From Schmidtea nova (Eukaryota): DNA of 64,000 nucleotides. The stretch is taken from positions 20,646,001 to 20,710,000 of the forward strand of contig CM097882.1 in the NCBI GenBank assembly GCA_044892505.1. The letters run 5' to 3'. Below are positions 8,509 through 57,649 of the stretch, in pieces (the stretch's first letter is position 1; every line of letters starts with the position of its first letter). The position numbers were made by a program, and so were the translations under genes. The notes below the pieces were generated by a model. That model was not told where the DNA came from. It made no database searches and saw nothing but the letters and a program-made list of their open reading frames with translations.

Positions 8509-8580
8509 TGCCCCCAGAGAGAATTGAACTCTCGACCCCTGGTTTACGAGACCAGTGCTCTACCTCTGAGCTATAGGGGC
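8509..8580 (-). tRNA. tRNA-Thr(CGT), type X
   Basis: GCCCCTATAGCTCAGAGGTAGAGCACTGGTCTCGTAAACCAGGGGTCGAGAGTTCAATTCTCTCTGGGGGCA; full cloverleaf, anticodon CGT. Confidence 0.96.
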
Positions 8581-8740
8581 TTAATATTTGAAACTTTGAA
8601 ACTTATTTTTAAACAATCAATCTTTGAAAACATTAATTTTTGACATATTTCGAAAGGTTGTAAAGCTTGTCAAATAAAATTGAAATTAATTCAAGGTATT
8701 TTGACTTTATTCTAAATCTTTTAAATCAAAAAAAATAAAA

Positions 8741-8783
8741 TGCCCCCAGAGAGATTTGAACTCTCGACCCCTGGTTTACAAGA
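8741..8783 (-). pseudogene. 3' half of tRNA-Thr(TGT), type Y, interrupted by element A1
   Basis: tRNA nt 30-72 joined to the element 3' end; 5' half absent. Confidence 0.95.
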
Positions 8784-9304
8784 TTAAACATTTATTATGA
8801 TAACAAATTTTAGATTGTACACAAATGAGTCGGTTCAACTTGGAACCTGCCATTCAAATCAATAATGTTTTAATGAGACAATTTTAAGTTTTTGTAATAT
8901 CATATTGCGAAAATATCTGTCTCAAGAAATCAAATCTCTTTGAATCTTCTCTGGCATTCTCTAATTTTCATCGGGTTATCATTCCGGCTTTGCGATTTCA
9001 AGTGGAGAATAGTATCAAAATTGAAGTTCTCGCAGCTGCATTTTCTTAGCATTTAATAATCAATCAGCAGAAATATTGAATTCTCTGATTTGCAGGACAG
9101 TTGAATACAATATGATCTCGATGATAGATATTATTTCAAATGCTTTTTTTTCTAAATTAAAAATAGAGCAATTCTCTGAATAAAGATTAGGATAATAAAC
9201 TTTAATGACTTTCAAGGCAGTCAAGAAATGACTAACGGAAAAAATGAATTACACAAAACAGAAAAATAATGATAATGCTCATAATTTCGCAATAGAAATA
9301 ATTT

Positions 9305-12300
9305 TTATGTGGTTGGAAGAAAACCAGTAGCATGAAAATGCCATGTTTTGGCAGAGTGCGAGATGTTACTAAGTGCACATGCTTTCAATAGATCGGATAT
9401 TTTCGAAATCTTTACACCCATTTTTTCAAGAACATCATTAGTTGCTGGTGGAACAGATCCTAAAGAACCAATTATACAAGTGTACAAGTCAACTGTAAAG
9501 TTTGGTTTAGCTGATTTAATTTTCAATTTTAGAGATTCATATTTTTCTATATTTCTTTTATTGACATCATCAAAATTTGCTATTGTGTCAAAGGGACACT
9601 TTACGTCAACCATGAGAATTGTCTTTTTGTCATTGTTGGTAATAATTAAATCAACTCGTTCTTTAGAGTCGCGAACTAACGAACATGCATGGTCCACTAC
9701 AACAATCAATTTAGGGTCTTTTAAATGTTGAGTAATCTGTTCGAGACAGTCGTTGTGACGCGAAAGTGCAAGAATTTGATGAACTTTACAATTTTGTAGG
9801 ACATGTCCACAAGTTTCTTCATCTTTATGACAACGTCGACAAATCCTCTCATCAGGTTTTCTATATGGTTTTGCGAAATTAGCTAGAGTATTTGTTCTGG
9901 CACGATGGATGAATTTCCAAGAACCTTCACGCAATTTCCCTCTAAATATCGCTTTGTTTATGTCGGGAGATAAGCTAGATGCTGATGAGCCACTTATGTT
10001 ACTATTTTTCAATTTAGTAAAATAAGAGTCATAGAGAGCAAGGTGCAAAATCTTTGAGATGGCTTTTCGGTTTAAGCACTTCAATATAATTGTGCCATTT
10101 GTAATTGTTGTGAGACGAATGATGGGTTCGTTTTCCAACACTTCAAACGATATTGTTATTTTGTGTGTCTTTTCAAAATATTGAATTGCTGTGCGTGGTC
10201 GGTAAAATCGGGTTTTCTTTCCCGAATGTTGTTTAATCATGTTGGCTCCATTAATCCAACTGAAGCTTTCTTGTAGCGATGGGTTGTTAATTCCAAGTCG
10301 AGGCCCAGTTACAAACTTTAGTGAATCTATATTTATCTTTTTTGCCAAAGGACAGATTGAAGTAAAAAGTCTAAAGAAATGACTGATGGTTTGTGTGTGA
10401 TATTCGTCGAGTAGATCAATACAAGAAGCACCTCCATTTTCAATAGAGTTGTAAAAGTAGCTGATTTCAGAATGATCAGACAAATTCATCATTTTTCTTA
10501 AATACTTCCTAAGCTTTGTTGTACTATTACCGATATTAGCAGAAAGAGCACTAATTTTAATTTCTCTTGTTCTAAATGGGAAAATTAGACGAGAGTGTAT
10601 GAAAATCTTGTAAGCTTTCAGCTTTTGCCAGCCGTACAAGTCTGAGTCGGCAAGTTTCTTGGTATCACTAACCACCTTATCAAGGATGTCATAAGGACTT
10701 TGGTCAGGGTCTTCACCAATCGGTACTCCAAGATATTCATAAAATTCTTTATTTAATAATTTCTTAATGATTGTATTGTCGACAGTTATCTCACTTGTTG
10801 TATTGAAACTTGGAAGTTGAATAAATGCACATTTTTCTGGTCGATACTCAAAGCCTATTTCAGATGCAGTGTCGTGTGCAATGTTTATTATCATTTGCAA
10901 GTCCTTAGCATTATTAGCAATAAGAGCAATATCGTCAGCATATGCAAGAACTTGGATTGAAGATTCACCAAGTTTAAAAGGTTTGACACTTGAAAGACTA
11001 ACAGATTGAAGAACAGGATTGATTGCTATTGCAAACAAGACCATTGAAAGAGGACATCCTTGTTTAACTCCTTGTTTTATTGCAATGTTTGGTGTTACAA
11101 TCGGACCACAGGTATAGAAGGAGCTAGTTTCAGTGTACAAAAGTTTCAAAATCTTAGTAAATTTCTCACTCATTCCAATATGACGCAAAATCGCCCACAT
11201 GTAATCATGGGGTACACTACCAAAAGCGTCCTTAATGTCAAGAAATGCAATAGCAACAGGTGTATTTTTACTGTATTTCGAGTGTTCAAGACAAGATGAA
11301 AGTATGGAATTGTGTTCAACACATCCATCATGAATAGAACCTCCTTTTTGTCCAACATGAAGAACATTATTTAGATTCACCCACAGTGTCAAACGTCTAG
11401 CTAATATTGATGAGAATAATTTGTAAACAACAGATAACAAAGCAATTGGACGCCAAGATGAGATTAAAGTGTATTTATCACCCTTGTCGTGTTTAGGAAT
11501 CATTAACGTTTTGAAGGATTTCCAAACGTCTGGAATTGTATTTTCCCTAATGATTTTATTAAATAAAAAGGTCAACAATTTACCCTCTGGATCAAGAATT
11601 GCAATGTCTTTATATTGAATTCCATCAAGCCCAGGAGAAGTATTATCAGCGTTTTTCAACTCATAGAGTACCTCTTTTTCACTGATCAAATTCAGATTTA
11701 GAATATTTAAAGATTTAATTGCAAATTTAAAAACTTTGTCATGATTCTTTAAAATAGGATCTCGATGACTAAAATTATCTATGTGATCTTTATTTGTTGG
11801 TCTATCCTTTATGTCGTCACTCATAAATATTTTATTTATTGTCTTTTTCATATTTTTATTAAAAGATGACGCCAAGTTAGTATTAGATGGTTTGTCTTTA
11901 TTTGTTTTGTTTCCTAAATATGGCCTACGTAATTTAGTTAAATTGACTTCTTCTTTACTTTTGGCAATAGTAGTAATAATAAATTCCGTTATTTCGTTAA
12001 CATTTGAATTTTGTAGATTTAACAAATGCTCATTTATCAAAGTTATACGTTGATTTATTTTAAGTTTAACATGTTGCTTTTCAATTTGTAAAGGCGTTAA
12101 TGGAATTTCCATACATTCTTTTACAGGTGGTAGGAGAGAATTTACAACATAACCAATGTCATGCAAATTAATGTTTTCAAGAGACAAGTCTAGAGCGTAG
12201 TTCTTGATGAAAGCACAGGTGAGAACCCTGCTTACAAGACCAGAACCTCGAACATCATGTGGACAATTACCAGTTTTGCTACAAAGACCAGGAGATTCTC

Positions 12301-13867
12301 TTATTTCATTGACTTTAGTTATTAAAGCTTTAGCAGTAGATAGATAAGGAGCATTATTCTCTAAAGTTGTTGGGTTTAATAAATAATGTTCATTATTGTT
12401 GTAGTCGATGACAAGCAGGATTTGTTGAGCTTGTGGTGGAGCAATAATTGAAAAAACAACTTGTGCTTTAGTTAGACGATCAATATTTAAAAAATCATTC
12501 AAATATTGAGTGCAGTCATCTAATATTGCAGTGCAAATGGTATTGTTTAAAAATATGAAATTTTCACACAGATTTAAATTATTAAAATAAATTGTTAAAA
12601 TATTATTCGTAATTTTAAAATTTAAAAAGTTTAGATTTAATGCCACTTCACCAAGTATTTTAGAATGAATAGTGTCGAGCTTTTCAATTACTCTATCTCT
12701 ATTGCAAATAGATCCTGAAATATATTGCTCCAAAAACATTATGAAAGTCGTGGCATGTTCTATTGGATCATCAGAAAACATTGAAGTTCGAAAAAGAGTA
12801 TGACGATGTTGTTGAAATTTTATTGAATTTTCTAAGATAAATTTATTTAAATAAACTGTCATATTTTCTCCAATTCCCAGCAGTCATTCAGTTATATTCA
12901 TAGAACGAACGTCAAAAATATAACTGCAGCCAAGACTAATAGAACAAAGAAAGAGACACCAATAGTTATCATTTGGAACAATACTGATAATAATGCGAAT
13001 ATCCTTAAATTGTTTAAAAGTAATATTGTCTCTTATATAAATATTATTTTGATTAATCAAATTTATTGTTAGTTCAGGAGAAAACACAAGCACACTTGGA
13101 TCATTTTGAAACCACTTATTTAAGAGTGTAGAAACACAAGCTTTCTCGTTGTTAAGTTTTATTGGTTTAACAATGTTGTTATTTTGGTGAATATTCTTTT
13201 TAAGCGCCATTGCTTTATTTAAATTAATTTTATTAAGAAAGTGATTCTTTGGCAATCCACCACCCGATAATTTGACATTGTAATTTGATTGACCTTTTTT
13301 ATAATCATGGATCTGTTTTCTAATGTTCAAGATAAAATCATCAGGTAAACATTCCCATTCTCCACTAACAATCATTGCGTATGCACAAATAAAAGGTCCA
13401 CAATCAAAATCATTATTTTGATATTTGAGATTTTTAATTGGATTGTCAGTTATTTGGTTGTGACGTTTGAATTTATTATTTAATACTGAGTTTATTTTTA
13501 GAGCATTAACTTTGCTGTCTAATCTATTCCTATAATTAAAGATTGGATCAATAAAATAAGAAGTCAAAGAAGTCTTGCAATAAACAAACAAGACCCAATG
13601 GCAATTATTAATATTGAGAGGACACAATATTACTTGGGATTCAAAAATTGTTTGAGGTATCGGAAAAATATCATCGGTCATATTTGAGCATAAAATACTT
13701 ACAACAAAACATTTAATGAAAGCAAAACTAGGGTTGCTGATGTGACTTTCAAAGAAATAGTCAATGTCATCATCAGTGAACCAACATTTTAAATCATGAA
13801 TGTCAAGAGTGCATTCTGCATCAGTCTCGTCAGACAATGCAGTACATGTAGAGGCTGATGCAGGCAC
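9305..13867 (-). pseudogene. A1 ORF2 (Ulp1x3-RT-CCHC-RLE) with a premature TGA at ~12884
   Basis: ORFs 12884-13867 and 9305-12862 are in frame. AGA>TGA relative to intact copies. YADD, CRRCH..HVLQNC, ERVDL, DVKCP. Confidence 0.93.
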
Positions 13868-13873
13868 ATCCCA

Positions 13874-16221
13874 TCATTTGGTGATCGCCTTTGATAGTTT
13901 ATGGTCTTTTCTAGTAGTCATTTTTCTAATGTCTGTATTTTGAGGTGGTAAACAAGATGTAGATTGCGCATCAATATCAGTTTCTAAGAGAGCCGATTAA
14001 TTAATGCCAGTATTATTTGAATCTACGACATTGGAGCTATGCTAACATCTTTACAAGTGTCTTTAGAAATTTCAATAACATCAACAGATTCACTACTAGT
14101 CAGAAGATTTTCAAGAGAGTCAACAAGATCAAAGATAACTGAAGTCATTTCAGCATTACAAATTTTACGACATTTAATTGGAACCTGAAAATAATCTATG
14201 TTCTTATTCAAAAATCTTTTCTTGTCTCTTATTATAAAGTATATCAGTCGTTTAGCCTTGATTATGTTAATGTCATCACACTCAGAACGGAATTCATTTA
14301 TGTGTGAAAAGACAGAGTCTATTGCATTCAGTTGGTCACTTTTTAGGGGAAAAAAGTTATTAATTAATTTTAAAAATTTATTAATTCTTTTAATTGTATC
14401 TTGTGAAATTATATTTTTTAATTTATCAATCTCACAGGTCAGCATCCATTGTTTGAATTTTATAAGTTTTTCCTGACAACTAATTCTAAAGTATGAAGAC
14501 GAAGGTATTTTATCAACAAATTCAGAGCCCCACACTTCAAAAGAGTCAATAGTCAAGGAATCGCATTTAGCACAGTCTATAACTGAATGAATAAGTAAGG
14601 AATTACGGAAATAATTGACAACATAATTATCATAATTTATATTTCTTGAAGATTTAATATTACCTTTTAAGTTTAAATAATTAAGATAGTAAATTAATTC
14701 CACAATCTTAATAGGAGAAGCGGGTAATGATAAAAGTTGATCTAAATGCTTATCAGTTCTACACATTTCATGCAAATCAAATAACCCAATATTAAACATT
14801 ATATCAGAGGCATTGATAGAATCAGCTTCTTTCATCACAGATTTACAATCAACAGTAAATTTACCATCTATAAATGAAATGTTCTTTGGAAAATCCCTAT
14901 TTAATTTTAAACTATTAATTAAATTAATTAATTTATCAGGATTCTTTGAAATATTTTCAATAAAAATCATTTCTTTTAGTTCAGGGTAATCGAGATAGAG
15001 TTTATTTATTTGTGATCTTGTAAGATTATTTGAAATTAATTCAAAACCAGCATTATGACAATTATCAGAAGTGGAAAAGTCTTTCATTATAAAGTCACCG
15101 TCAACATACCTTATTTCTGATTTAACAAGAAAGTCTGGCAATTGTTTTTGCAATTTTAACAAATCTAAGGCTTTATTAATAACGCTTCCCTTTTTAATAG
15201 AGACAGTTTCTGCCAATTTGCTTGAGAGAGCAAATAAAAATTTTTTTATTTCTAAAGGTGCAGGAATGAGGTTATATGTAAAATTATCGGTAGCAATAAT
15301 ATCCGAAATAAATGTTTTTTTCTTATTTAGAATATTAAGGTTTTGAGGAAGTTGATTAGAGTTAGCCATTTTATTACTATTTAATTTAATCGAAGCACAA
15401 AAATTATTGTTTCGATAAAATATGTGATCAAAATCCTCAACAAACTTAAAATTTGAATTATTTATTAAAGAAAGTTCATAATTTATACGATGATATTTAT
15501 TTAGGGATTTCTTTAATTTTAATAGTTCTTTTAAACGTGGAAAATTATTAATTAAATTGGTACGCTCATTTTTAGTTAAAATCCGGGGTAAAAAATCAAA
15601 TTTAAATTCATCAATTTTAACATTTCTTTTCCCCTTATTTAGTGAAATTTTAACAGATTTTTTAATTAAAGTTTTACTAAAACTATCATCAGAAACTAGG
15701 TCTAAATTTTGACCGTCTGCTTCAGCGTAAGATTTATCAGAAGGTTTTGGTATATCATTTATATCATTAGAATTATTATTTAATTTTATATTACTATTTA
15801 ATTTAGAAATATGATTATTTTTATTATTATTAAAATTATGAAAATTAGGAGCATTATCAAAATTATTAACGTTTAAAGAATTCAAGATTCCAACAATCAA
15901 ATCAAGTTTACCCTGAAAATCAACAAAGTTCTTCTCCAGAGCAACCATTCGTTGGAAAAGTCCATCATCAGAAGTTGAAGGAAAAGAAATTCCATCTGAT
16001 TTTTCAGGGAAAATATCCATTTTAGATTGTCGGCAAGGTTCATATTTAAGCATAGAGATTTCTTTCGATCTTTTCTTTAAAATATCCATAAGAGATTGAG
16101 AAGATTGAATTTGTCTTCTCAGAAAATCAACGATTAGCATATTTTCATTTAGATTGGACTGATTACACAATAAATCATCAGAGTGACTCTGATTGGCCGA
16201 TTGCATAATTCCAGTGTGCAT
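13874..16221 (-). pseudogene. A1 ORF1 with internal deletions and a frameshift at ~14035
   Basis: Lacks 20 aa and 4 aa relative to the 806-aa copies; a 1-bp loss diverts the C-terminus. Confidence 0.9.
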
Positions 16222-16573
16222 GATTGAGTAGGATTATTTTCTTTTTTCAACGATTATACCAAACACAACAAATTTACTAGAAAATATATTATCTTTTATT
16301 CTTCTGTTTATTTCATCAAAATTAAAAGATTAGTTTTTGTTGGTTTGAATAATTTTTTATGAGAATATCGTGAAATATTTGTTTTTTTCATAGACGTAAA
16401 AATTTGAATGATATTTAAAAATGCACAACTAGACGTGAAAGATAGAAATGATTGAGTTTGAAGGATTTGGAATTTCAAAATGATTCATGTGTTTTATTGT
16501 GTAATATCTTATAAATTAAAAAATTTCATTGTTTGCTTTATTGATGATTCAAAACTGATTTTAAGAAAATATA

Positions 16574-16630
16574 TGCCCCCAGAGAGAATTGAACTCTCGA
16601 CCCCTGGTTTACGAGACCAGTGCTCTACCT
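16574..16630 (-). pseudogene. tRNA-Thr(CGT) lacking first ~15 nt, interrupted by element C in the D-loop
   Basis: Plus strand ...CCAGTGCTCTACCT|TTTAAAATTTTATT. Confidence 0.93.
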
Positions 16631-17128
16631 TTTAAAATTTTATTAATACAACAAGTTTTTTAATCTTTCTTTTTGAGAGGGCTCAGCTTGGAACCCGCCG
16701 TTCATTGAGTTTCTGCTCTAGAGAGACAAATTTCTTGTTTTTCGTAATTGAATTGTTGGAAGAAATATTGTCGTAACAGGCATCAATCTTTGAATGCTCT
16801 CTGGCTTCTCTGATGTTCTTCGGATAACAGTCCGGCTTTGCGCTTTCAGGTTTTTCAGGCTTATCTCTTGAAATTGGCAGATTTATTTAGATTGAATAAT
16901 TTTAAGTATGTCATTTTGGTTTGTAGTTCCATAGACATTATATTCTTCATCAATCAGTTTTCGGTAATTCATTTCTCTGGAATAAAACAAAGTATTTCCT
17001 GACCAGGTTGACAGGTGTAGAATATATTTAATTATCAAAGTAATAATGATAAGATCATAAGCAAATAAACATTTATCTAATCTAAAAACAACAATGATAA
17101 CGAAAATATCTACAGTTTCTTTAAATAA

Positions 17129-21691: not shown

Positions 21692-21697
21692 ATCCCA

Positions 21698-24109: not shown

Positions 24110-24461
24110 GATTGAGTAGGGTTATTTTCTATTTTCAACGATTATACCAAACACAACAAATTTACTAGAAAATATATTATCTTTTATTCTTCTGTTTATT
24201 TCTTCAAAATTAAAAGATTAGTTTTTGTTGGTTTGAATAATTTTTTATGAGAATATCGTGAAATATTTGTTTTTTTCATAGACGTAAAAATTTGAATGAT
24301 ATTTAAAAATGCACAACTAGACGTGAAAGATAGAAATGATTGAGTTTGAAGGATTTGGAATTTCAAAATGATTCATGTGTTTTATTGTGTAATATCTTAT
24401 AAATTAAAAAATTTCATTGTTTGCTTTATTGATGATTCAAAACTGATTTTAAGAAAATATA

Positions 24462-24533
24462 TGCCCCCAGAGAGAATTGAACTCTCGACCCCTGGTTTAC
24501 GAGACCAGTGCTCTACCTCTGAGCTATAGGGGC
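24462..24533 (-). tRNA. tRNA-Thr(CGT), type X
   Basis: Identical to 8509-8580. Confidence 0.96.
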
Positions 24534-24694
24534 TTAATATTTGAAACTTTGAAACTTATTTTTAAACAATCAATCTTTGAAAACATTAATTGTTGACAAA
24601 TTTCGAAAGGTTGTAAAGCTTGTCAAATAAAATTGAAATTAATTCAAGGTATTTTGACTTTATTCTAAATCTTTTAAATCAAAAAAAAATAAAA

Positions 24695-24766: not shown

Positions 24767-24932
24767 TCGAAATTATTCTTGATTTGTGAAATCTTCTCAA
24801 TTCTTTTGGAGTTTCTAAATTCAAATTTTAAAATTTCTTAAATTTTCAGACACTAATTTTCGAAAAATTGTTGTCAAAGTTGTCTCAAAAAATTGCAAAA
24901 TGTCGACAAGACGATTTTCAATTTGGTAATTG

Positions 24933-41018: not shown

Positions 41019-41538
41019 TTAAACATTTATTATGATAACAAATTTTAGATTTTACACAAATGAGACGGTTCAACTTGGAACCTGCCATTCAAATCAATAA
41101 TGTTTTAATGAGACAATTTTCAGTTTTTGTAATATCACATTGCGAAAATATCTGTCTCAAGAAATCAAATCTCTTTGAATCTTCTCTGGCATTCTCTGAT
41201 TTTCATCGGGATATCATTCCGGCTTTGCGATTTCAAGTTGAGAATAGTATCAAAATTGAAGTTCTCGCAGCTGCATTTTCTTAGCATTTAATAATCAATC
41301 AGCAGAAATATTGAATTCTCTGATTTACAGGACAGTTGAATACAATATGATCTCGATGCTAGATATTATTTCAAATGCTTTTTTTTCTAAATTAAAAATA
41401 GAGCAATTCTCTGAATAAAGATTAGGATAATAAACTTTAATGACTTTCAAGGTAGTCAAGAAATGACTAACGGAAAAATGAATTACACAAAACAGAAAAA
41501 TAATGATAATGCTCCCAATTTCGCAATAGAAATAATTT

Positions 41539-46101: not shown

Positions 46102-46107
46102 ATCCCA

Positions 46108-48529: not shown

Positions 48530-48881
48530 GATTGAGTAGGATTATTTTCTTTTTTCAACGATTATACCAAACACAACAAATTTACTAGAAAATATATTAT
48601 CTTTTATTCTTCTGTTTATTTCATCAAAATTAAAAGATTAGTTTTTGTTGGTTTGAATAATTTTTTATGAGAATATCGTGAAATATTTGTTTTTTTCATA
48701 GACGTAAAAATTTGAATGATATTTAAAAATGCACAACTAGACGTGAAAGATAGAAATAATTGAGTTTGAAGGATTTAGAATTTCAAAATGATTCATGTGT
48801 TTTATTGTGTAATATCTTATAAATTAAAAAATTTCATTGTTTGCTTTATTGATGATTCAAAACTGATTTTAAGAAAATATA

Positions 48882-48953
48882 TGCCCCCAGAGAGAATTGA
48901 ACTCTCGACCCCTGGTTTACGAGACCAGTGCTCTACCTCTGAGCTATAGGGGC
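48882..48953 (-). tRNA. tRNA-Thr(CGT), type X
   Basis: Full cloverleaf. Confidence 0.96.
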
Positions 48954-49113
48954 TTAATATTTGAAACTTTGAAACTTATTTTTAAACAATCAATCTTTGA
49001 AAACATTAATTGTTGACAAATTTCGAAAGGTTGTAAAGCTTGTCAAATAAAATTGAAATTAATTCAAGGTATTTTGACTTTATTCTAAATCTTTTAAATC
49101 AAAAAAAATAAAA

Positions 49114-49185
49114 TGCCCCCAGAGAGATTTGAACTCTCGACCCCTGGTTTACAAGACCAGTGCTCTACCCCTGAGCTATAGGGGC
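49114..49185 (-). tRNA. tRNA-Thr(TGT), type Y
   Basis: Full cloverleaf. Confidence 0.96.
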
Positions 49186-49365
49186 TCGAAATTATTCTTG
49201 ATTTGTGAAATCTTCTCAATTCTTTTGGAGTTTCTAAATTCAAATTTTAAAATTTCTTAAATTTTCAGACACTAATTTTCGAAAAATTGTTGTCAAAGTT
49301 GTCTCAAAAAATTGCAAAATGTCGACAAGACGATTTTCAATTTGGTAATTGATTGTAAAAATTAT

Positions 49366-49437
49366 TGCCCCCAGAGAGATTTGAACTCTCGACCCCTGGT
49401 TTACAAGACCAGTGCTCTACCCCTGAGCTATAGGGGC
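49366..49437 (-). tRNA. tRNA-Thr(TGT), type Z
   Basis: Full cloverleaf. Confidence 0.96.
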
Positions 49438-49783
49438 CATGACAAATTTTCTTTTTTCAACGATTATACCAAACACAACAAATTTACTAGAAAATATATT
49501 ATCTTTTATTCTTCTGTTTATTTCATCAAAATTAAAAGATTAGTTTTTGTTGGTTTGAATAATTTTTTATGAGAATATCGTGAAATATTTGTTTTTTTCA
49601 TAGACGTAAAAATTTGAATAATATTTAAAAATGCACAACTAGACGTGAAAGATAGAAATAATTGAGTTTGAAGGATTTGGAATTTCAAAATGATTCATGT
49701 GTTTTATTGTGTAATATCTTATAAATTAAAAAATTTCATTGTTTGCTTTATTGATGATTCAAAACTGATTTTAAGAAAATATA

Positions 49784-49826
49784 TGCCCCCAGAGAGAATT
49801 GAACTCTCGACCCCTGGTTTACGAGA
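49784..49826 (-). pseudogene. 3' half of tRNA-Thr(CGT) interrupted by A4
   Basis: ...GGTTTACGAGA|TTAAACATTT. Confidence 0.95.
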
Positions 49827-50307
49827 TTAAACATTTATTATGATAACAAATTTTAGATTTTACACAAATGAGACGGTTCAACTTGGAACCTGCCATTCAA
49901 ATCAATAATGTTTTAATGAGACAATTTTCAGTTTTTGTAATATCACATTGCGAAAATATCTGTCTCAAGAAATCAAATCTCTTTGAATCTTCTCTGGCAT
50001 TCTCTGATTTTCATCGGGATATCATTCCGGCTTTGCGATTTCAAGTTGAGAATAGTATCAAAATTGAAGTTCTCGCAGCTGCATTTTTCTGATTTACAGG
50101 ACAGTTGAATACAATATGATCTCGATGCTAGATATTATTTCAAATGCTTTTTTTCTAAATTAAAAATAGAGCAATTCTCTGAATAAAGATTAGGATAATA
50201 AACTTTAATGACTTTCAAGGTAGTCAAGAAATGACTAACGGAAAAAATGAATTACACAAAACAGAAAAATAATGATAATGCTCCTAATTTCGCAATAAAA
50301 ATAATTT

Positions 50308-53300
50308 TTATGTGGTTGGAAGAAAACCAGTAGCATGAAAATGCCATGATTTGGCAGAGTGCGAGATGTTACTAAGCGCACATGCTTTCAATAGATCGGG
50401 TATTTTCGAAATCTTTACACCCATTTTTTCAAGAACATCATTAGTTGCTGGTGGAACAGATCCTAAAGAACCAATTATACAAGTGTACAAGTCAACTGTA
50501 AAGTTTGGTTTAGCTGATTTGATTTTCAATTTTAGAGATTCATATTTTTCTATATTTCTTTTATTGACATCATCAAAATTTGCTATTGTGTCAAAGGGAC
50601 ACTTTACGTCAACCATGAGAATTGTCTTTTTGTCATTGTTGGTAATAATTAAATCAACTCGTTCTTTAGAGTCGCGAACTAACGAACATGCATGGTCCAC
50701 TACAACAATCAATTTAGGGTCTTTTAAATGTTGAGTAATCTGTTCGAGACAGTCGTTGTGACGCGAAAGTGCAAGAATTTGATGAACTTTACAATTTTGT
50801 AGGACATGTAACAAAGTTTCTTCATCTTTATGACAACGTCGACAAATCCTCTCATCAGGTTTTCTATTTGGTTTTGCGAAATTAGCTAGAGTATTTGTTC
50901 TTGCACGATGGATGAATTTCCAAGAACCTTCACGCAATTTCCCTCTAAATATCGCTTTGTTTATGTCGGGAGATAAGCTATATGCTGATGACCCACTTAT
51001 GTTACTATTTTTCCATTTAGTAAAATAAGAGTCATAGAGAGCAAGGTGCAAAATCTTTGAGATGGCTTTTCGGTTTAAGCACTTCAATATAATTGTGCCA
51101 TTTGTAATTGTTGTGAGACGAATGATGGGTTCGTTTTCCAACACTTCAAACGATATTGTTATTTTGTGTGTCTTTTCAAAATATTGAATTGCTGTGCGTG
51201 GTCGGTAAAATCGGGTTTTCTTTCCCGAATGTTGTTTAATCGTGTTGGCTCCATTAATCCAACTGAAGCTTTCTTGTAGCGATGGGTTGTTAATTCCAAG
51301 TCGAGGCCCAGTTACAAACTTTAGTGAATCTATATTTATCTTTTTTGCCAAGGGACAGATTGAAGTAAAAAGTCTAAAGAAATGACTGATGGTTTGTGTG
51401 TGATATTCGTCGAGTAGATCAATACAAGAAGCACCTCCATTTTCAATAGAGTTGTAAAAGTAGCTGATTTCAGAATGATCAGACAAATTCATCATTTTTC
51501 TTAAATACTTCCTAAGCTTTGTTGTACTATTACCGATATTAGCAGAAAGAGCACTAATTTTAATTTCTCTTGTTCTAAATGGGAAAATTAGACGAGAGTG
51601 TATGAAAATCTTGTAAGCTTTCAGCTTTTGCCAGCCGTACAAGTCTGAGTCGGCAAGTTTCTTGGTATCACTAACCACCTTATCAAGGATGTCATAAGGA
51701 CTTTGGTCAGGGTCTTCACCTATTGGTACTCCAAGATATTCATAAAATTCTTTATTTAATAATTTCTTAATGATTGTATTGTCGACAGTTATCTCACTTG
51801 TTGTATTGACACTTGGAAGTTGAATAAATGCACATTTTTCTGGTCGATACTCAAAGCCTATTTCAGATGCAGTGTCATGTGCAATGTTTATTATCATTTG
51901 CAAGTCCTTAGCATTATTAGCAATAAGAGCAATATCGTCAGCATATGCAAGAACTTGGATTGAAGATTCACCAAGTTTAAAAGGATTGACACTTGAAAGA
52001 CTAACAGCTTGAAGAACAGGATTGATTGCTATTGCAAACAAGACCATTGAAAGAGGACATCCTTGTTTAACTCCTTGTTTTATTGCAATGTTTGGTGTTA
52101 CAATCGGACCACAGGTATAGAAGGAGCTAGTTTCAGTGTACAAAAGTTTCAAAATCTTAGTAAATTTCTCACTCATTCCAATATGACGCAAAATCGCCCA
52201 CATGTAATCATGAGGTACACTACCAAAAGCGTCCTTAATGTCAAGAAATGCAATAGCAACAGGTGTATTTTTACTGTATTTCGAGTGTTCAAGACAAGAT
52301 GAAAGTATGGAATTGTGTTCAACACATCCATCATGAATAGAACCTCCTTTTTGTCCAACATGAAGAACATTATTTAGATTCACCCACAGTGTCAAACGTC
52401 TAGCTAAAATTGATGAGAATAATTTGTAAACAACAGATAACAAAGCAATTGGACGCCAAGATGAGATTAAAGTGTATTTATCACCCTTGTCGTGTTTAGG
52501 AATCATTAACGTTTTGAAGGTTTTCCAAACGTCTGGAATTGTATTTTCCCTAATGATTTTATTAAATAAAAAGGTCAACAATTTACCCTCTGGATCAAGA
52601 ATTGCAATGTCTTTATATTGAATTCCATCAAGCCCAGGAGAAGTATTATCAGCGTTTTTCAACTCATAGAGTACCTCTTTTTCACTGATCAAATTCAGAT
52701 TTAGAGTATTTAAAGATTTAATTGCAAATTTAAAAACTTTGTCATGATTCTTTAAAATAGGATCTCGATGACTAAAATTATCTATGTGATCTTTAATTGT
52801 TGGTCTATCCTTTATGTCGTCACTCATAAATATTTTATTTATTGTCTTTTTCATATTTTTATTAAAAGATGACGCCAAGTTAGTATTAGATGGTTTGTCT
52901 TTATTTGTTTTGTTTCCTAAATATGGCCTACGTAATTTAGTTAAATTGACTTCTTCTTTACTTTTGGCAATAGTAGTAATAATAAATTCCGTTATTTCGT
53001 TAACATTTGAATTTTGTAGATTTAACAAATGCTCATTTATCAAAGTTATACGTTGATTTATTTTAAGTTTAACATGTTGCTTTTCAATTTGTAAAGGCGT
53101 TAATGGAATTTCCATACATTCTTTTACAGGTGGTAGGAGAGAATTTACAACATTACCAATGTCATGCAAATTAATGTTTTCAAGAGACAAGTCTAGAGCG
53201 TAATTCTTGATGAAAGCACAGATGAGAACCCTGCTTACAAGACCAGAACCTCGAACATCATGTGGACAATTACCAGTTTTGCTACAAAGACCAGGAGATT

Positions 53301-54870
53301 CTCGTATTTCATTGACTTTAGTTATTAAAGCTTTAGCAGTAGATAGGTAAGGAGCATTATTCTCTAAAGTTGTTGGGTTTAATAAATAATGTTCATTATT
53401 GTTGTAGTCAATGACAAGCAGGATTTGTTGAGCTTGTGGTGGAGCAATAATTGAAAAAACAACTTGTGCTTTAGTTAGACGATCAATATTTAAAAAATCA
53501 TTCAAATATTGAGTGCAGTCATCTAATATTGCAGTGCAAATGGTATTGTTTAAAAATATGAAACTTTCACACAGATTTAAATTATTAAAATAATTTGTTA
53601 AAATATTATTCGTAATTTTAAAATTTAAAAAGTTTAGATTTAATGCCACTTGACCAAGTATTTTGGAATGAATAGTGTCGAGCTTTTCAATTACTCTATC
53701 TCTATTGCAAATAGATCCTGAAATATATTGCTCCAAAAACATTATGAAAGTCGTGGCATGTTCTATTGGATCATCAGAAAACATTGAAGTTCGAAAAAGA
53801 GTATGACGATGTTGTTGAAATTTTATTGAATTTTCTAAGATAAATTTATTTAAATAATCTGTCATATTTTCTCCAATTCCCAGCAGTCTTTCAGTTATAT
53901 TCGTAGAGCGAACGTCAAAAATATAACTGCAGCCAAGACTAATTGAACAAAGAAAGAGACACCAATAGTTATCATTTGGAACAATACTGATAATAATGCG
54001 AATATCCTTAAATTGTTTAAAAGTAACATTGTCTCTTATATAAATATTATTTTGATTAATCAAATTAATTGTTAGTTCAGGAGAAAACACAAGCACACTT
54101 GGATCATTTTGAAACCACTTATTTAAGAGTGTAGAAACACAAGCTTTCTCGTTGTTAAGTTTTATTGGTTTAACAATGTTGTTATTTTGGTGAATATTCT
54201 TTTTAAGCGCCATTGCTTTATTTAAATTAATTTTATTAAGAAAATGATTCTTTGGCAATCCACCACCCGATAATTTGACATTGTGATTTGATTGACCTTT
54301 TTTAAAATCGTGGATCTGTTTTCTAATGTTCAAGATAAAATCATCAGGTAAACATTCCCATTCTCCACTAACAATCATTGCGTATGCACAAATAAAAGGT
54401 CCACAATCAAAATCATTATTTTGATATTTGAGATTTTTAATTGGATTGTCAGTTATTTGGTTGTGACGTTTGAATTTATTATTTAATACTGAGTTTATTT
54501 TTAGAGCATTAACTTTGCTGTCTAATCTATTCCTATAATTAAAGATTGGATCAATAAAATAAGACGTCAAAGAAGTCTTGCAATAAACAAACAAGACCCA
54601 ATGGCAATTATTAATATTGAGAGGACACAATATTACTTGGGATTCAAAAATTGTTTGAGGTATCGGAAAAATATCATCGGTCATATTTGAGCATAAAATA
54701 CTTACAACAAAACATTTAATGAAAGCAAAACTAGGGTTGCTGATGTGACTTTCAAAGAAATAGTCAATGTCATCATCAGTGAACCAACATTTCAAATCAT
54801 GAATGTCAAGAGTGCATTCTGCATCAGTCTCGTCAGACAATGCAGTACATGTAGAGGCTGATGCAGGCAC
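50308..54870 (-). CDS. A4 ORF2 polyprotein (1520 aa)
   Basis: Same motifs as A2. Confidence 0.97.
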   Translation of the reverse strand: MPASASTCTALSDETDAECTLDIHDLKCWFTDDDIDYFFESHISNPSFAFIKCFVVSILCSNMTDDIFPIPQTIFESQVILCPLNINNCHWVLFVYCKTSLTSYFIDPIFNYRNRLDSKVNALKINSVLNNKFKRHNQITDNPIKNLKYQNNDFDCGPFICAYAMIVSGEWECLPDDFILNIRKQIHDFKKGQSNHNVKLSGGGLPKNHFLNKINLNKAMALKKNIHQNNNIVKPIKLNNEKACVSTLLNKWFQNDPSVLVFSPELTINLINQNNIYIRDNVTFKQFKDIRIIISIVPNDNYWCLFLCSISLGCSYIFDVRSTNITERLLGIGENMTDYLNKFILENSIKFQQHRHTLFRTSMFSDDPIEHATTFIMFLEQYISGSICNRDRVIEKLDTIHSKILGQVALNLNFLNFKITNNILTNYFNNLNLCESFIFLNNTICTAILDDCTQYLNDFLNIDRLTKAQVVFSIIAPPQAQQILLVIDYNNNEHYLLNPTTLENNAPYLSTAKALITKVNEIRESPGLCSKTGNCPHDVRGSGLVSRVLICAFIKNYALDLSLENINLHDIGNVVNSLLPPVKECMEIPLTPLQIEKQHVKLKINQRITLINEHLLNLQNSNVNEITEFIITTIAKSKEEVNLTKLRRPYLGNKTNKDKPSNTNLASSFNKNMKKTINKIFMSDDIKDRPTIKDHIDNFSHRDPILKNHDKVFKFAIKSLNTLNLNLISEKEVLYELKNADNTSPGLDGIQYKDIAILDPEGKLLTFLFNKIIRENTIPDVWKTFKTLMIPKHDKGDKYTLISSWRPIALLSVVYKLFSSILARRLTLWVNLNNVLHVGQKGGSIHDGCVEHNSILSSCLEHSKYSKNTPVAIAFLDIKDAFGSVPHDYMWAILRHIGMSEKFTKILKLLYTETSSFYTCGPIVTPNIAIKQGVKQGCPLSMVLFAIAINPVLQAVSLSSVNPFKLGESSIQVLAYADDIALIANNAKDLQMIINIAHDTASEIGFEYRPEKCAFIQLPSVNTTSEITVDNTIIKKLLNKEFYEYLGVPIGEDPDQSPYDILDKVVSDTKKLADSDLYGWQKLKAYKIFIHSRLIFPFRTREIKISALSANIGNSTTKLRKYLRKMMNLSDHSEISYFYNSIENGGASCIDLLDEYHTQTISHFFRLFTSICPLAKKINIDSLKFVTGPRLGINNPSLQESFSWINGANTIKQHSGKKTRFYRPRTAIQYFEKTHKITISFEVLENEPIIRLTTITNGTIILKCLNRKAISKILHLALYDSYFTKWKNSNISGSSAYSLSPDINKAIFRGKLREGSWKFIHRARTNTLANFAKPNRKPDERICRRCHKDEETLLHVLQNCKVHQILALSRHNDCLEQITQHLKDPKLIVVVDHACSLVRDSKERVDLIITNNDKKTILMVDVKCPFDTIANFDDVNKRNIEKYESLKLKIKSAKPNFTVDLYTCIIGSLGSVPPATNDVLEKMGVKISKIPDLLKACALSNISHSAKSWHFHATGFLPTT

Positions 54871-54876
54871 ATCCCA

Positions 54877-57297
54877 TCATTTGGTGATCGCCTTTGATAG
54901 TTTATGGTCTTTCCTAGTAGTCATTTTTCTAATGTCTGTATTTTTAGGTGGTAAACAAGATGTAGATTGCGCATCAATATCAGTTTCTAAGAGAGCCGAT
55001 TTAATGATACCTGTATTATTTGAATCTACGACATTGGAGCTAACGCTAACATCTTTACAAGTGTCTTTAGAAATTTCAATAACATCAACAGATTCACTAC
55101 TAGTCAGAAGATTTTCAAGAGAGTCAACAAGATCAAAGATAACTGAAGTCATTTCAGCATTACAAATTTTACGACATTTAATTGGAACCTGAAAATAATC
55201 TATGTTCTTATTCAAAAATCTTTTCTTGTCTCTTATTATAAAGTATATCAGTCGTTTAGCCTTGATTATGTTAATGTCATCACACTCAGAACGGAATTCA
55301 TTTATGTGTGAAAAGACAGAGTCTATTGCATTCAGTTGGTCACTTTTTAGGGGAAACAAGTTATTAATTAATTTTAAAAATTTATTAATTCTTTTAATTG
55401 TATCTTGTGAAATTATATTTTTTAATTTATCAATCTCACAGGTCAGCATCCATTGTTTGAATTTTATAAGTTTTTCCTGACAACTAATTCTAAAGTATGA
55501 AGACGAAGGTATTTTATCAACAAATTCAGAGCCCCACACTTCAAAAGAGTCAATAGTCAAGGAATCGCATTTAACACAGTCTATAACTGAATGAATAAGT
55601 AAGGAATTTCGGAAATAATTGACAACATAATTATCATAATTTATATTTCTTGAATATTTAATATTACCTTTTAAGTTTAAATAATTAAGATAGTAAATTA
55701 ATTCCACAATCTTAATAGGAGAAGCGGGTAATGATAAAAGTTGATCTAAATGCTTATCAGTTCTACACATTTCATGCAAATCAAATAACCCAATATTAAA
55801 CATTATATCAGAGGCATTGATAGAATCAGCTTCTTTCATCGCAGATTTACAATCAACAGTAAATTTACCATCTATAAATGAAATGTTCTTTGGAAAATCC
55901 CTATTTAATTTTAAACTATTAATTAAATTAATTAATTTATCAGGATTCTTTGAAATATTTTCAATAAAAATCATTTCTTTTAGTTCAGGGTAATCCAGAT
56001 AGAGTTTATTTATTTGTGATCTTGTAAGATTATTTGAAATTAATTCAAAACCAGCATTATGACAATTATCAGAAGTGGAAAAGTCTTTCATTATAAAGTC
56101 ACCGTCAACATACCTTATTTCTGATTTAACAAGAAAGTCTGGCAATTGTTTTTGCAATTTTAACAAATCTAAGGCTTTATTAATAACGCTTCCCTTTTGA
56201 ATTTCATTTTTAATAGAGACAGTTTCTGCCAATTTGCTTGAGAGAGCAAATAAAAATTTTTTTATTTCTAAAGGTGCAGGAATGAGGTTAGATGTAAAAT
56301 TATCGGTAGCAATAATATCCGAAATAAATGTTTTTTTCTTATTAAGAATATTAGGGTTTTGAGGAAGTTGATTAGAGTTAGCCATTTTATTACTATTTAA
56401 TTTAATCGAAGCACAAAAATTATTGTTTCGATAAAATATATGATCAAAATCCTCAACAAACTTAAAATTTGAATTATTTATTAAAGAAAGTTCATAATTT
56501 ATACGATCATATTTATTTACGGATTTCTTTAATTTTAATAGTTCTTTTAAACGTGGAAAATTATTAATTAAATTGGTACGCTCATTTTTAGTTAAAATCC
56601 GGGGTAAAAAATCAAATTTAAATTCATCAATTTTAACATTTCTTTTCCCCTTATTTAGTGAAATTTTAACAAATTTTTTAATTAAAGTTTTACTAAAACT
56701 ATCATCAGAAACTAGGTCTAAATTTTGACCGTCTGCTTCAGCGTAAGATTTATCAGAAGGTTTTGGTATATCATTTATATCATTAGAATTATTATTTAAT
56801 TTTATATTACTATTTAATTTAGAAATATGATTATTTTTATTATTATTAAAATTATGAAAATTAGGAGCATTATCAAAATTATTAACGTTTAAAGAATTCA
56901 AGATTCCAACAATCAAATCAAGTTTACCCTGAAAATCAACAAAGTTCTTCTCCAGAGCCACCATTCGTTGGAAAAGTCCATCATCAGAAGTTGGAGGAAA
57001 TGAAATTCCATCTGATTTTTCAGGCAAAACATCCATTTTAGATTGTGTCTTGGGTAAATAATTTGCCTGAAAAGCATTGAAATTTCTCTCAGGAATCTCC
57101 ACTCGTCGGCCAGGTTCATCTTTAAGCATAGAGATTTCTTCTGATCTTTTCTTTAAAATATCCATAAGAGATTGAGAAGATTGAATTTGTCTTCTCAGAA
57201 AATCAACGATTAGCATATTTTCATTTAGATTTGACTGATTACACAATAAATCATCAGAGTGACTCTGATTGGCCGATTGCATAATACCAGTGTGCAT
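54877..57297 (-). CDS. A4 ORF1 (806 aa), unknown function
   Basis: Open frame; differs from A2 ORF1 at one residue I could see. Confidence 0.9.
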   Translation of the reverse strand: MHTGIMQSANQSHSDDLLCNQSNLNENMLIVDFLRRQIQSSQSLMDILKKRSEEISMLKDEPGRRVEIPERNFNAFQANYLPKTQSKMDVLPEKSDGISFPPTSDDGLFQRMVALEKNFVDFQGKLDLIVGILNSLNVNNFDNAPNFHNFNNNKNNHISKLNSNIKLNNNSNDINDIPKPSDKSYAEADGQNLDLVSDDSFSKTLIKKFVKISLNKGKRNVKIDEFKFDFLPRILTKNERTNLINNFPRLKELLKLKKSVNKYDRINYELSLINNSNFKFVEDFDHIFYRNNNFCASIKLNSNKMANSNQLPQNPNILNKKKTFISDIIATDNFTSNLIPAPLEIKKFLFALSSKLAETVSIKNEIQKGSVINKALDLLKLQKQLPDFLVKSEIRYVDGDFIMKDFSTSDNCHNAGFELISNNLTRSQINKLYLDYPELKEMIFIENISKNPDKLINLINSLKLNRDFPKNISFIDGKFTVDCKSAMKEADSINASDIMFNIGLFDLHEMCRTDKHLDQLLSLPASPIKIVELIYYLNYLNLKGNIKYSRNINYDNYVVNYFRNSLLIHSVIDCVKCDSLTIDSFEVWGSEFVDKIPSSSYFRISCQEKLIKFKQWMLTCEIDKLKNIISQDTIKRINKFLKLINNLFPLKSDQLNAIDSVFSHINEFRSECDDINIIKAKRLIYFIIRDKKRFLNKNIDYFQVPIKCRKICNAEMTSVIFDLVDSLENLLTSSESVDVIEISKDTCKDVSVSSNVVDSNNTGIIKSALLETDIDAQSTSCLPPKNTDIRKMTTRKDHKLSKAITK

Positions 57298-57649
57298 GAT
57301 TGAGTAGGATTATTTTCTTTTTTCAACGATTATACCAAACACAACAAATTTACTAGAAAATATATTATCTTTTATTCTTCTGTTTATTTCATCAAAATTA
57401 AAAGATTAGTTTTTGTTGGTTTGAATAATTTTTTATGAGAATATCGTGAAATATTTGTTTTTTTCATAGACGTAAAAATTTGAATGATATTTAAAAATGC
57501 ACAACTAGACGTGAAAGATAGAAATAATTGAGTTTGAAGGATTTAGAATTTCAAAATGATTCATGTGTTTTATTGTGTAATATCTTATAAATTAAAAAAT
57601 TTCATTGTTTGCTTTATTGATGATTCAAAACTGATTTTAAGAAAATATA

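What the first reader, a model, noticed from the sequence alone, without database searches (positions are those of the whole stretch)
8509..57311. Three related RLE retrotransposon lineages partition one 72-nt tRNA-Thr gene into three insertion sites
Seen: all six elements are full length and co-oriented with the tRNAs. A inserts after tRNA nt 29 (anticodon stem; 8783, 32669, 41018, 49826), C after nt ~15 (D-loop; 16630) and B after nt 42 (24976), so the sites are 13-14 nt apart. Established: RLE-clade LINEs (R2, R4, NeSL, Utopia) are sequence-specific for multicopy RNA genes. Inference: niche partitioning among sibling lineages inside one small target, each with different junction chemistry (deletion versus duplication). 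This is the main system in the window. tRNA-associated NeSL-like families may already be catalogued, but B and C each rest on one copy here.
Basis: partly seen in the sequence, partly recalled or inferred. Interest (0 to 1): 0.85.

Follow-up and report, generated by a model that had tools for sequence, protein, structure and literature searches.

The report
tRNA-Thr-targeting NeSL-like retrotransposons
A tandem array of threonine tRNA genes has been colonised by six 7.5-kb copies of a site-specific, R2/NeSL-type retrotransposon family that cuts the 72-nt gene at three exact positions; this is a new example of a known lifestyle, and it shows that the end of the element that travels with the cut site is a swappable module.

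Summary
Window 8188-64000 is a minus-strand tRNA-Thr array with a 1320-bp unit of four genes. It carries six co-oriented 7.45-7.64-kb elements. Their 3' ends abut tRNA nt 30 (A, four copies in three different gene copies), nt 16 (C) and nt 43 (B).

ORF2 is Ulp1 protease + RT + CCHC + restriction-like endonuclease. ORF1 is joined to it in frame through one UGA followed by a conserved stem-loop.

The interpretation needs correcting in several respects.
- C is not an independent sibling. Its first ~3 kb lies within A diversity, and only the last ~2 kb (RT C-terminal part, linker, CCHC-RLE, 3'UTR) is old (dS 1.4-1.9, dN/dS ~0.1).
- B is a truly diverged lineage, but it is broken.
- Only A2 and A4 are intact.
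- All five A/C copies share one 5' flank, 8 nt upstream of tRNA C'. Only A4 has contiguous flanks (37-bp deletion), so recombination has reshaped the 5' sides.
- B has an exact 44-bp duplication.
- The B and C sites occupy the same position in the tRNA's best internal repeat.

tRNA-gene-specific NeSL-related families (Pro, Arg, Glu) are already published. I therefore class this as a new member of a known kind. The site partition remains plausible, but B and C each rest on one copy.

The parts
8188..64000 (-). Tandem tRNA-Thr gene array. The canonical unit is 1320 bp, with genes in transcription order C'(CGT), T2(TGT), T1(TGT), C(CGT). The array runs off the window end and its edge lies at about 8188-8248.
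58552..59871 (-). Uninterrupted reference unit used for all flank mapping: C' 58552-58623, C 58970-59041, T1 59202-59273, T2 59454-59525.
8784..16235 (-). Element A1 (7452 bp). Its 3' end abuts nt 30 of a T1 gene (remnant 8741-8783).
13874..16221 (-). A1 ORF1, broken (1 frameshift and 1 stop).
9305..13873 (-). A1 ORF2, broken (1 stop).
16631..24123 (-). Element C (7493 bp). Its 3' end abuts nt 16 (or 17) of a C-type tRNA (remnant 16574-16630). It is a mosaic of A-family 5' sequence and a distinct 3' module.
16631..18730 (-). C-specific 3' module with approximate bounds: C-terminal part of RT, linker, CCHC, RLE and 3'UTR. It is 15-50% diverged from A at the nucleotide level, with dS 1.4-1.9 and dN/dS about 0.1.
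21698..24109 (-). C-element ORF1, broken (1 stop). It is A-type, 97% aa identical to A2.
17129..21697 (-). C-element ORF2, open over its whole length.
24977..32612 (-). Element B (7636 bp). Its 3' end abuts nt 43 of a T2 gene (remnant 24947-24976). It is a diverged lineage: ORF2 is 54% and ORF1 37% aa identical to A.
30318..32547 (-). B ORF1, broken (1 frameshift).
25724..30317 (-). B ORF2, broken (1 frameshift and 1 stop).
24933..24976 (-). Downstream copy of B's exact 44-bp target-site duplication (tRNA nt 43-72 plus 14 nt of trailer, including the T5 run).
32613..32656 (-). Upstream copy of B's 44-bp duplication. It is part of the T2 remnant 32627-32669, which is also the 3' flank of A2.
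32670..40153 (-). Element A2 (7484 bp), both ORFs open. Its 3' end abuts nt 30 of T2.
37719..40139 (-). A2 ORF1 (806 aa, ending in the in-frame TGA at 37719-37721). The ATG lies 15 nt from the element's 5' end. There is no Pfam or PDB match, and it is 20-31% identical to the ORF1 of relatives.
33150..37718 (-). A2 ORF2 (1522 codons after the TGA).
37654..37712 (-). Conserved 17-bp stem-loop starting 8 nt after the ORF1 TGA, the putative read-through signal.
37209..37499 (-). Ulp1/C48 protease domain of A2 ORF2. The His, Asp and Cys of the catalytic triad align to yeast Ulp1.
36033..36980 (-). Two further Ulp1-like (CE-clan) folds, seen only in the predicted structure (moderate confidence).
34275..35555 (-). 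Reverse transcriptase domain of A2 ORF2.
33258..33692 (-). CCHC zinc knuckle plus restriction-like endonuclease of A2 ORF2.
32719..32737 (-). Conserved 3'UTR hairpin of A2, 49 nt from the 3' end. The equivalent hairpins in B, C and relative L001 carry compensatory changes.
41019..48543 (-). Element A3 (7525 bp). Its 3' end abuts nt 30 of T2 (remnant 40976-41018).
46108..48529 (-). A3 ORF1, broken (1 frameshift).
41539..46107 (-). A3 ORF2, open.
49827..57311 (-). Element A4 (7485 bp), both ORFs open (ORF1 54877-57297, ORF2 50308-54876). Its 3' end abuts nt 30 of C' (remnant 49784-49826). It is the only copy with contiguous flanks, which show a 37-bp target deletion.

Best explanation

Each element encodes ORF1, then an in-frame UGA with a downstream stem-loop (inferred programmed read-through), then a polyprotein of Ulp1 protease(s), RT, CCHC and RLE.

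Shown: the 3' junctions are exact. A sits after nt 29 in three different gene copies, C after nt 15/16 and B after nt 42. There is no poly(A) and no microhomology, and a conserved 3'UTR hairpin lies at a fixed distance from the end.

Inferred: integration is by endonuclease nicking of the antisense strand and target-primed reverse transcription, started on the element's own 3'UTR.

Shown: A and C share their 5' 5.4 kb through recombination. Divergence rises in two steps, and synonymous divergence goes from 0.04 to 1.9 along ORF2. Only a 3' module stays lineage-specific and is under purifying selection: the RT C-terminal part, linker, CCHC-RLE and 3'UTR.

Inferred: that 3' module carries the choice of nick position.

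B is a separate, older and now broken lineage. Its site is the same position as C's in the tRNA's internal near-repeat (nt 13-24 versus nt 40-51).

Shown: all A/C copies have the same 5' flank, 8 nt upstream of tRNA C', whichever tRNA holds the 3' junction.

Inferred: the 5' sides were made or remade by homologous recombination between elements in the array, or by homology-guided 5' joining, with loss of 455-925 bp of array. They were not made by lineage-specific second-strand cuts.

The clean cases show a 37-bp target deletion (A4) and a 44-bp duplication (B). The duplication would have regenerated a whole tRNA gene upstream of B.
For: - Array and junctions.
- Domains: Pfam RVT_1 and Peptidase_C48; RT and CCHC+RLE align to R2 structures 9nl2, 9nl3 and 9dou; Ulp1 triad.
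- A2 and A4 are 99.9% identical and intact, yet sit in different tRNA genes.
- C mosaic: identity profile, within-A diversity of its first 3 kb, aa identity by domain, dS gradient with dN/dS 0.09-0.18.
- 3'UTR hairpin at 49-50 nt from the end in A, B, C and L001, with 4 of 6 pairs showing compensatory change.
- Relative L001 (49% aa identity) ends against a tRNA D-arm sequence, i.e. a C-like site.
- The B and C sites are 27 nt apart, which is the offset of the tRNA's best internal 12-mer match, 10/12.
- Common 5' flank: diagnostic spacer columns and tRNA order, sizes of missing array.
- Long duplications are a family trait: L003 has an exact 70-bp duplication that shares a private variant.
- Read-through context and stem-loop are conserved in 8 relatives.
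Against: - B and C are single copies here. B is broken in both ORFs, and C's ORF1 has a stop.
- No other copy of this genome could be retrieved, so fixed B and C sites are not demonstrated.
- The mosaic of C could have arisen after insertion. In that case it says less about which part sets the site. The intermediate step, with dS 0.17-0.30 under selection, argues that at least one older exchange happened in an active lineage.
- No DNA-binding domain was identified, so the link from module to site is correlative.
- Read-through and the activity of the proteins are inferred from sequence only.
- Clade placement (NeSL versus other R2-group clades) was not tested with named reference sequences.
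Confidence: 0.65

Rival explanations
1. One reading: three independently evolving sibling lineages, each with its own fixed insertion site in tRNA-Thr and its own second-strand cleavage offset (niche partitioning with lineage-specific junction chemistry).
For: Three exact sites are occupied. B is diverged over its whole length. C's 3' module is old and under selection. A4 shows a deletion and B a duplication.
Against: C's first ~3 kb lies within A-family diversity and the next ~2.4 kb is only ~6% diverged. The five A/C 5' junctions are identical and independent of the tRNA hit, so they are not lineage-specific chemistry. There is one copy each for B and C.
Confidence: 0.2
2. Only A is truly specific for its site. 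The B and C junctions are one-off events: relaxed or off-target nicking at a sequence resembling the real target, or elements whose usual target is another tRNA species and which strayed into the Thr array.
For: B and C are single copies, and B is degenerate. The B and C sites share a short motif that overlaps the generic tRNA D-arm/box A sequence. Relative L001 sits in the D-arm of an unidentified tRNA, so a D-arm-type site need not be Thr-specific.
Against: B and C each have a clean 3' end at the family's fixed distance from the hairpin. The two sites fall at exactly equivalent motif positions. C's nuclease module has been kept under purifying selection.
Confidence: 0.2
3. The copies were multiplied by unequal crossing-over of the array (segmental duplication of element plus unit). 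On this view they are not repeated retrotransposition, and site specificity is an illusion created by a single ancestral insertion.
For: A2 and A3 have the same kind of flanks and lie one 8.39-kb super-unit apart. All A/C 5' flanks are alike.
Against: The A 3' junctions lie in three different gene copies (T1, T2, C') with different downstream spacers. A2 is closest to A4 (6 substitutions), which sits in a different tRNA, and not to A3. Relatives in other organisms also end at specific targets.
Confidence: 0.05

Closest known systems
NeSL-related tRNA-gene-specific families: NeSL-1_TV (tRNA-Pro, Trichomonas), and LIN15_SM (tRNA-Arg) and LIN25_SM (tRNA-Glu) of the planarian R5/LIN lineage (Kojima & Jurka 2015, PMC4640811)
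   Same: These are RLE-type non-LTR retrotransposons that insert at a specific site inside multicopy tRNA genes. Target specificity has diversified within one lineage.
   Different: The target here is tRNA-Thr, and three positions within the one gene are occupied. The elements are 7.5 kb with two ORFs; the trichomonad NeSL averages 4.4 kb (PMC12289875). No sequence comparison with those families was possible, because no named reference was retrievable.
NeSL-1 of Caenorhabditis (spliced-leader gene specific) and Utopia-1_TSP
   Same: [quoted passage not shown] The target is a multicopy small-RNA gene (for the literature; for this element).
   Different: The targets are different RNA genes. Here a separate ORF1 is linked by a UGA and stem-loop, there are two extra protease-like folds, and no N-terminal zinc fingers were found.
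R2 (28S rDNA), and the several RLE/APE lineages that coexist at different sites of rDNA (R1, R2, R4, R5 and others; own knowledge)
   Same: The RT and CCHC-RLE are homologous to solved R2 proteins. Insertion is by TPRT with an exact 3' junction and no need for poly(A). Inserted units cluster within a tandem array. Several lineages share one multicopy gene at different sites.
   Different: There is no N-terminal ZF/Myb, a protease is present, and the target is a 72-bp Pol III gene rather than rDNA. The offsets are long (37-bp deletion, 44-70-bp duplication) against R2's few bp. A very long duplication is known for rotifer R9 (own knowledge).
Dada DNA transposons (PMC8869645)
   Same: They insert at specific sites in multicopy tRNA or snRNA genes.
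   Different: They are DNA transposons with a different enzyme and mechanism.

Membership tests
RLE-bearing non-LTR retrotransposons (R2 group) | Reverse transcriptase of the non-LTR type | tested here: met
   Pfam RVT_1 E=1.9e-28. Aligns to R2 proteins 9nl2, 9nl3, 9dou and 8gh6, E down to 3e-51.
RLE-bearing non-LTR retrotransposons (R2 group) | C-terminal CCHC zinc knuckle followed by a PD-(D/E)XK restriction-like endonuclease, with no APE endonuclease | tested here: met
   The second aligned stretch, ORF2 aa 1341-1485, matches the R2 CCHC+RLE. The CCHC motif is present in A, B and C. There is no Exo_endo_phos hit.
RLE-bearing non-LTR retrotransposons (R2 group) | No LTRs or TIRs, and an exact 3' junction at a specific target sequence | tested here: met
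R2 sensu stricto | N-terminal zinc-finger/Myb DNA-binding domains and insertion in 28S rDNA | tested here: not met
   There is no C2H2 or CCHH motif N-terminal of RT. The region instead folds as Ulp1-like domains. The target is tRNA-Thr.
NeSL clade (NeSL-1, R5/LIN, Utopia) | Ulp1-like cysteine protease N-terminal of RT (present in NeSL-1 and Utopia-1_TSP, not in all members) | tested here: met
   Pfam PF02902 E=5e-8 for A and 4e-9 for A1. The triad aligns to 1euv.
NeSL clade (NeSL-1, R5/LIN, Utopia) | RT phylogeny places the element with NeSL-1, R5 or Utopia rather than with R2, R4, HERO or CRE | not testable with these tools
   No named NeSL, R5 or LIN reference was returned by any search. 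The closest named hits are unclassified or auto-named arthropod and Plectus proteins at ~30% identity. Oomycete RNase H-RT proteins and PDB R2 both score about E=1e-51.
NeSL clade (NeSL-1, R5/LIN, Utopia) | Specific insertion into a multicopy small RNA gene | tested here: met
Published tRNA-specific families (NeSL-1_TV, LIN15_SM, LIN25_SM) | Same target tRNA species and site | tested here: not met
   Their published targets are tRNA-Pro, tRNA-Arg and tRNA-Glu. The target here is tRNA-Thr.

The most novel reading that the evidence does not exclude
Within one family, exchanging a 3' module (RT C-terminal part, linker, CCHC-RLE and 3'UTR) is what moves the nick by 14 bp inside a 72-bp target, while ORF1, the proteases and most of RT are freely shared by recombination. 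On this reading the B and C modules read the same short motif at its two occurrences in the tRNA. B-type integration, with its 44-bp duplication, would regenerate an intact tRNA gene, which makes it a host-sparing mode. Together these would be a natural series of re-targeted RLE retrotransposons. The family also has a retrovirus-like gag / read-through / protease / pol layout that I did not find described for this group.
Probability: 0.3. Interest if true: 0.7.

Novelty: new member of a known kind. Interest (0 to 1): 0.48.

Why it matters
Site-specific RLE retrotransposons are studied as models of how a mobile element picks a 'safe' multicopy target, and how target choice is encoded is an open question. 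The window shows two things in a very small target.
- One lineage (A) has high fidelity: the same nucleotide is used in three gene copies.
- In a close relative (C) only the nuclease-proximal module and the 3'UTR differ, and the site has shifted by 14 bp.

If a census confirms this, it locates the determinant of nick position by comparative sequence alone. It also documents how recombination inside a tandem array mixes element lineages and erases 5' junction history. That is a caution for anyone reading 'junction chemistry' from array-resident copies.

Tried and rejected
- Exact-protein look-ups of the A, B and C ORF2 found nothing on record, so no further copies from this genome were available.
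- A metagenome scan with a 19-nt pattern of the 3'UTR hairpin first failed on the specified-base rule. The narrowed scan returned 120 loci, none of which encodes a relative. These were chance matches and a dead end.
- Contigs of relatives P0002, P0004 and P0006 stop before the 3' junction.
- Rfam found nothing in the relatives' contigs, so the tRNA-like flank of L127 and the 201-bp repeat of L003 remain unnamed.
- Host organism: not identified. A trichomonad was considered because NeSL-1_TV targets tRNA-Pro, but trichomonad NeSL is 4.4 kb. Planarian or another metazoan was considered because the closest named hits are animal and AATAAA is conserved near the 3' end. Sample accessions were not found in papers.
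- Microhomology-primed choice of site was rejected: the element 3' ends share no bases with the target, beyond one ambiguous A at the C junction.
- A 12-nt match of ORF2 to tRNA nt 26-37 and a 10-nt antisense match in the A 3'UTR are at chance level (E 0.19 and 3).
- ORF1 has no Pfam or PDB match.
- The supplementary figures of PMC4640811 hold no searchable text for the published tRNA sites.
Full report
**1. What is in the window**

ARAGORN and Rfam find 28 intact 72-nt tRNA-Thr genes, all on the minus strand. There are three sequence types: CGT with A16 ('C'), CGT with G16 ("C'") and TGT ('T').

From 57312 to the window end they form a regular tandem array with a 1320-bp unit. In transcription order the unit is C', a 346-nt spacer, T2, a 180-nt spacer, T1, a 160-nt spacer, C, a 346-nt spacer.

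The array begins at about 8188-8248. Between 8784 and 57311 it is interrupted six times by 7.45-7.64-kb insertions, all on the minus strand. GC content is 15-41%, which looks eukaryotic. The N runs at 171-755 and 2874-3223 were left alone.

**2. The junctions**

BLAST of the tRNA against the window gives exactly six partial tRNAs. All are 3' parts lying directly downstream of an element:
- nt 30-72, four times (elements A1, A2, A3, A4);
- nt 16-72, once (element C);
- nt 43-72, once (element B).

The four A junctions lie in T1, T2, T2 and C', which are three different gene copies with different trailers. The element ends are identical in all four.

A 6-bp hairpin lies 49-50 nt before the 3' end in A, B and C. 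It lies 49 nt before a tRNA D-arm sequence in the unrelated metagenome relative L001. Four of its six pairs show compensatory changes. The last ~45 nt, including AATAAA 7-8 nt from the end, are conserved in all relatives. There is no poly(A) and no microhomology.

The 3' ends are therefore real, precise, protein-directed junctions. The C junction is ambiguous by one base.

**3. The elements**

ORF2 (1522 codons) carries these domains:
- a Ulp1/C48 protease (Pfam), whose His, Asp and Cys align to yeast Ulp1;
- an RT;
- a CCHC knuckle plus restriction-like endonuclease, which with the RT aligns to solved R2 proteins.

There is no APE domain and no zinc finger N-terminal of RT. A model of residues 171-720 (pLDDT 66) shows two more Ulp1-like folds by Foldseek, with 1euv at TMt 0.60.

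ORF1 (806 aa) has no database match but is conserved at 20-31% in relatives. It starts 15 nt from the element's 5' end.

ORF1 and ORF2 are in one frame, separated by a single TGA. A 17-bp stem-loop begins 8 nt after it and is conserved in eight elements that share only 31-49% protein identity. I read this as programmed read-through giving an ORF1-protease-RT-RLE polyprotein. That is an inference.

Integrity by copy:

| Copy | ORF1 | ORF2 |
|---|---|---|
| A2 | open | open |
| A4 | open | open |
| A1 | 2 breaks | 1 break |
| A3 | 1 break | open |
| C | 1 break | open |
| B | 1 break | 2 breaks |

A2 and A4 differ by 6 substitutions yet sit in different tRNA genes. This points to very recent insertion.

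**4. A, B and C are not three equal lineages**

B is diverged throughout: ORF2 is 54% and ORF1 37% aa identical to A.

C is a mosaic. Against A2 its divergence changes along the element:

| Region of C | Divergence from A2 |
|---|---|
| First ~3 kb | ~1.4%, no more than A1 differs from A2 |
| ~3.0 to ~5.4 kb | ~6% |
| ~5.4 kb to the end of ORF2 | 15-30% |
| 3'UTR | ~50% |

Along ORF2, synonymous divergence rises through 0.04, 0.17, 0.30, 1.43 and 1.92, while dN/dS stays at 0.09-0.18.

So C has an old, selected 3' module comprising the C-terminal part of RT, the linker, CCHC-RLE and the 3'UTR. This module has been grafted at least twice onto A-type 5' sequence. Its C-terminal module is still closest to A (75-79% aa), then to B (57-61%). 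What co-varies with the 14-nt site shift between A and C is this module. ORF1, the proteases and most of RT do not co-vary with it.

**5. The 5' junctions**

All five A/C copies start with the same bases and abut the same spot, the 9th nucleotide upstream of a tRNA in the 346-nt spacer. Two lines of evidence show it is the spacer upstream of C' in every case:
- the next upstream genes are C, T1, T2;
- the two diagnostic spacer columns read G,G for A1, C and A2, and G,A for A3 and A4.

Only A4, which is inserted in C', has contiguous flanks, and it shows a 37-bp deletion (8 nt of leader plus tRNA nt 1-29). For the other copies the flanks imply loss of array sequence:

| Copy | Array missing between the 5' and 3' flanks |
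|---|---|
| A2, A3 | 455 bp |
| A1 | 707 bp |
| C | 925 bp |

The simplest reading is homologous recombination between elements at different positions of the array. This also explains why C carries an A-type 5' half together with an A-type flank. An alternative is homology-guided 5' joining, using upstream array sequence carried on a co-transcript. The window cannot separate the two.

A TATAAT lies 20-25 nt upstream of the junction. Together with the 14-nt 5'UTR, this suggests the element may use the tRNA gene's upstream promoter element. That is speculation.

B is different. Its flanks carry an exact 44-bp duplication of tRNA nt 43-72 plus 14 nt of trailer, including the T5 run. The upstream copy would therefore have been a whole tRNA gene, and that gene now carries A2. 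Relative L003 has an exact 70-bp duplication that shares a private variant within a 201-bp tandem repeat. Long staggered cuts are thus a family trait.

**6. Relation between the sites**

The best internal 12-mer match of the tRNA is nt 13-24 against nt 40-51 (10/12 identical, offset 27). The C site (after nt 15) and the B site (after nt 42) are 27 nt apart, at the same position in that motif. L001's junction is within 1 nt of the C site in another tRNA's D-arm. The A site shows no such similarity.

This suggests that B and C read related sequence and that A's site is the derived one. That is an inference from few cases.

**7. Relatives and literature**

The protein search found no copy of this genome. 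The best hits are 38-49% identical, have the same protease-RT layout, and come from unnamed Logan and ENA contigs. Their contigs show the same ORF1-TGA-ORF2 arrangement.

Kojima & Jurka 2015 (PMC4640811) already report several relevant points:
- NeSL-related families are specific for tRNA-Pro (NeSL-1_TV), tRNA-Arg (LIN15_SM) and tRNA-Glu (LIN25_SM).
- A Ulp1-like protease is present in NeSL and Utopia-1_TSP.
- Target specificity has diversified in the R5/LIN lineage.

I found no paper on a tRNA-Thr-specific family or on several sites within one tRNA gene. Clade placement could not be tested, because no named NeSL, R5 or LIN sequence came back.

**8. Verdict**

The system is a tRNA-Thr-specific, recently active member of the known group of RLE retrotransposons that target multicopy small-RNA genes.

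'Three lineages partitioning the gene' is partly supported. There is one robust site (A), one sub-lineage that differs by a 3' module (C, one copy), and one old, broken lineage (B, one copy). The 'junction chemistry' contrast rests on one clean case each, and most 5' junctions have been overwritten by recombination.

The decisive functional experiment lies outside what this report may propose. A genome-wide census of junctions by 3'-module type is the best descriptive test.

Noticed in passing
window 37654-37721 (A2); equivalent places in A4, B and loci L001-L005, L127: ORF1 and ORF2 are in the same frame, separated by one TGA. A conserved 17-bp stem-loop starts 8 nt downstream, in eight elements of 31-49% protein identity. 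This is the architecture of programmed stop-codon read-through, placing a gag-like ORF1 upstream of a protease-RT-endonuclease polyprotein.
   Followed up: partly
window 36033-36980 (A2 ORF2 aa ~245-560): The predicted structure shows two further Ulp1/CE-clan-like folds after the canonical protease domain. No zinc-finger or Myb DNA-binding domain is found N-terminal of RT. Model confidence is moderate (pLDDT 66).
   Followed up: partly
window 57312-57340 and the equivalent 5' flanks of A1, A2, A3 and C: A TATAAT box lies 20-25 nt upstream of the element's first base, and the 5'UTR is only 14 nt. After insertion the element start sits about where the tRNA gene's own transcription would begin.
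   Followed up: no
window 3300-8187, e.g. 5189-5482 (+) and 7318-8039 (+): The left flank of the array holds only short, degenerate ORFs. One has a P-loop ATPase-like Walker B region (weak Pfam hit only). It reminded me of the packaging ATPase of Maverick/Polinton-like elements, but this was not tested and nothing was fetched.
   Followed up: no
window 1-2000: Extremely AT-rich sequence (15% GC). Two N runs (171-755 and 2874-3223) were left untouched.
   Followed up: no
L003 1-140 and 7517-8223: A relative at 38% identity sits in a 201-bp tandem repeat of unknown nature (no Rfam match). It has an exact 70-bp target duplication and an ORF1 ATG directly at the 5' junction.
   Followed up: partly
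L127 7375-7500: The 3' flank of a 31%-identity relative contains a tRNA T-arm-like GGTTCGAATC stretch. It is followed by CTGATGAG...GAAAC, which resembles a hammerhead-ribozyme core. Rfam reported neither.
   Followed up: partly
window 12232-12243, 20056-20067, 36077-36088, 44466-44477, 53235-53246: A 12-nt stretch inside ORF2 of A and C is identical to tRNA nt 26-37, which spans the A insertion site. It is chance level by BLAST (E 0.19).
   Followed up: no
window 8784-57311 versus 57312-64000: All six elements lie in consecutive, shortened units at the array's edge, while at least five following units are untouched. This clustering resembles that of inserted rDNA units.
   Followed up: no
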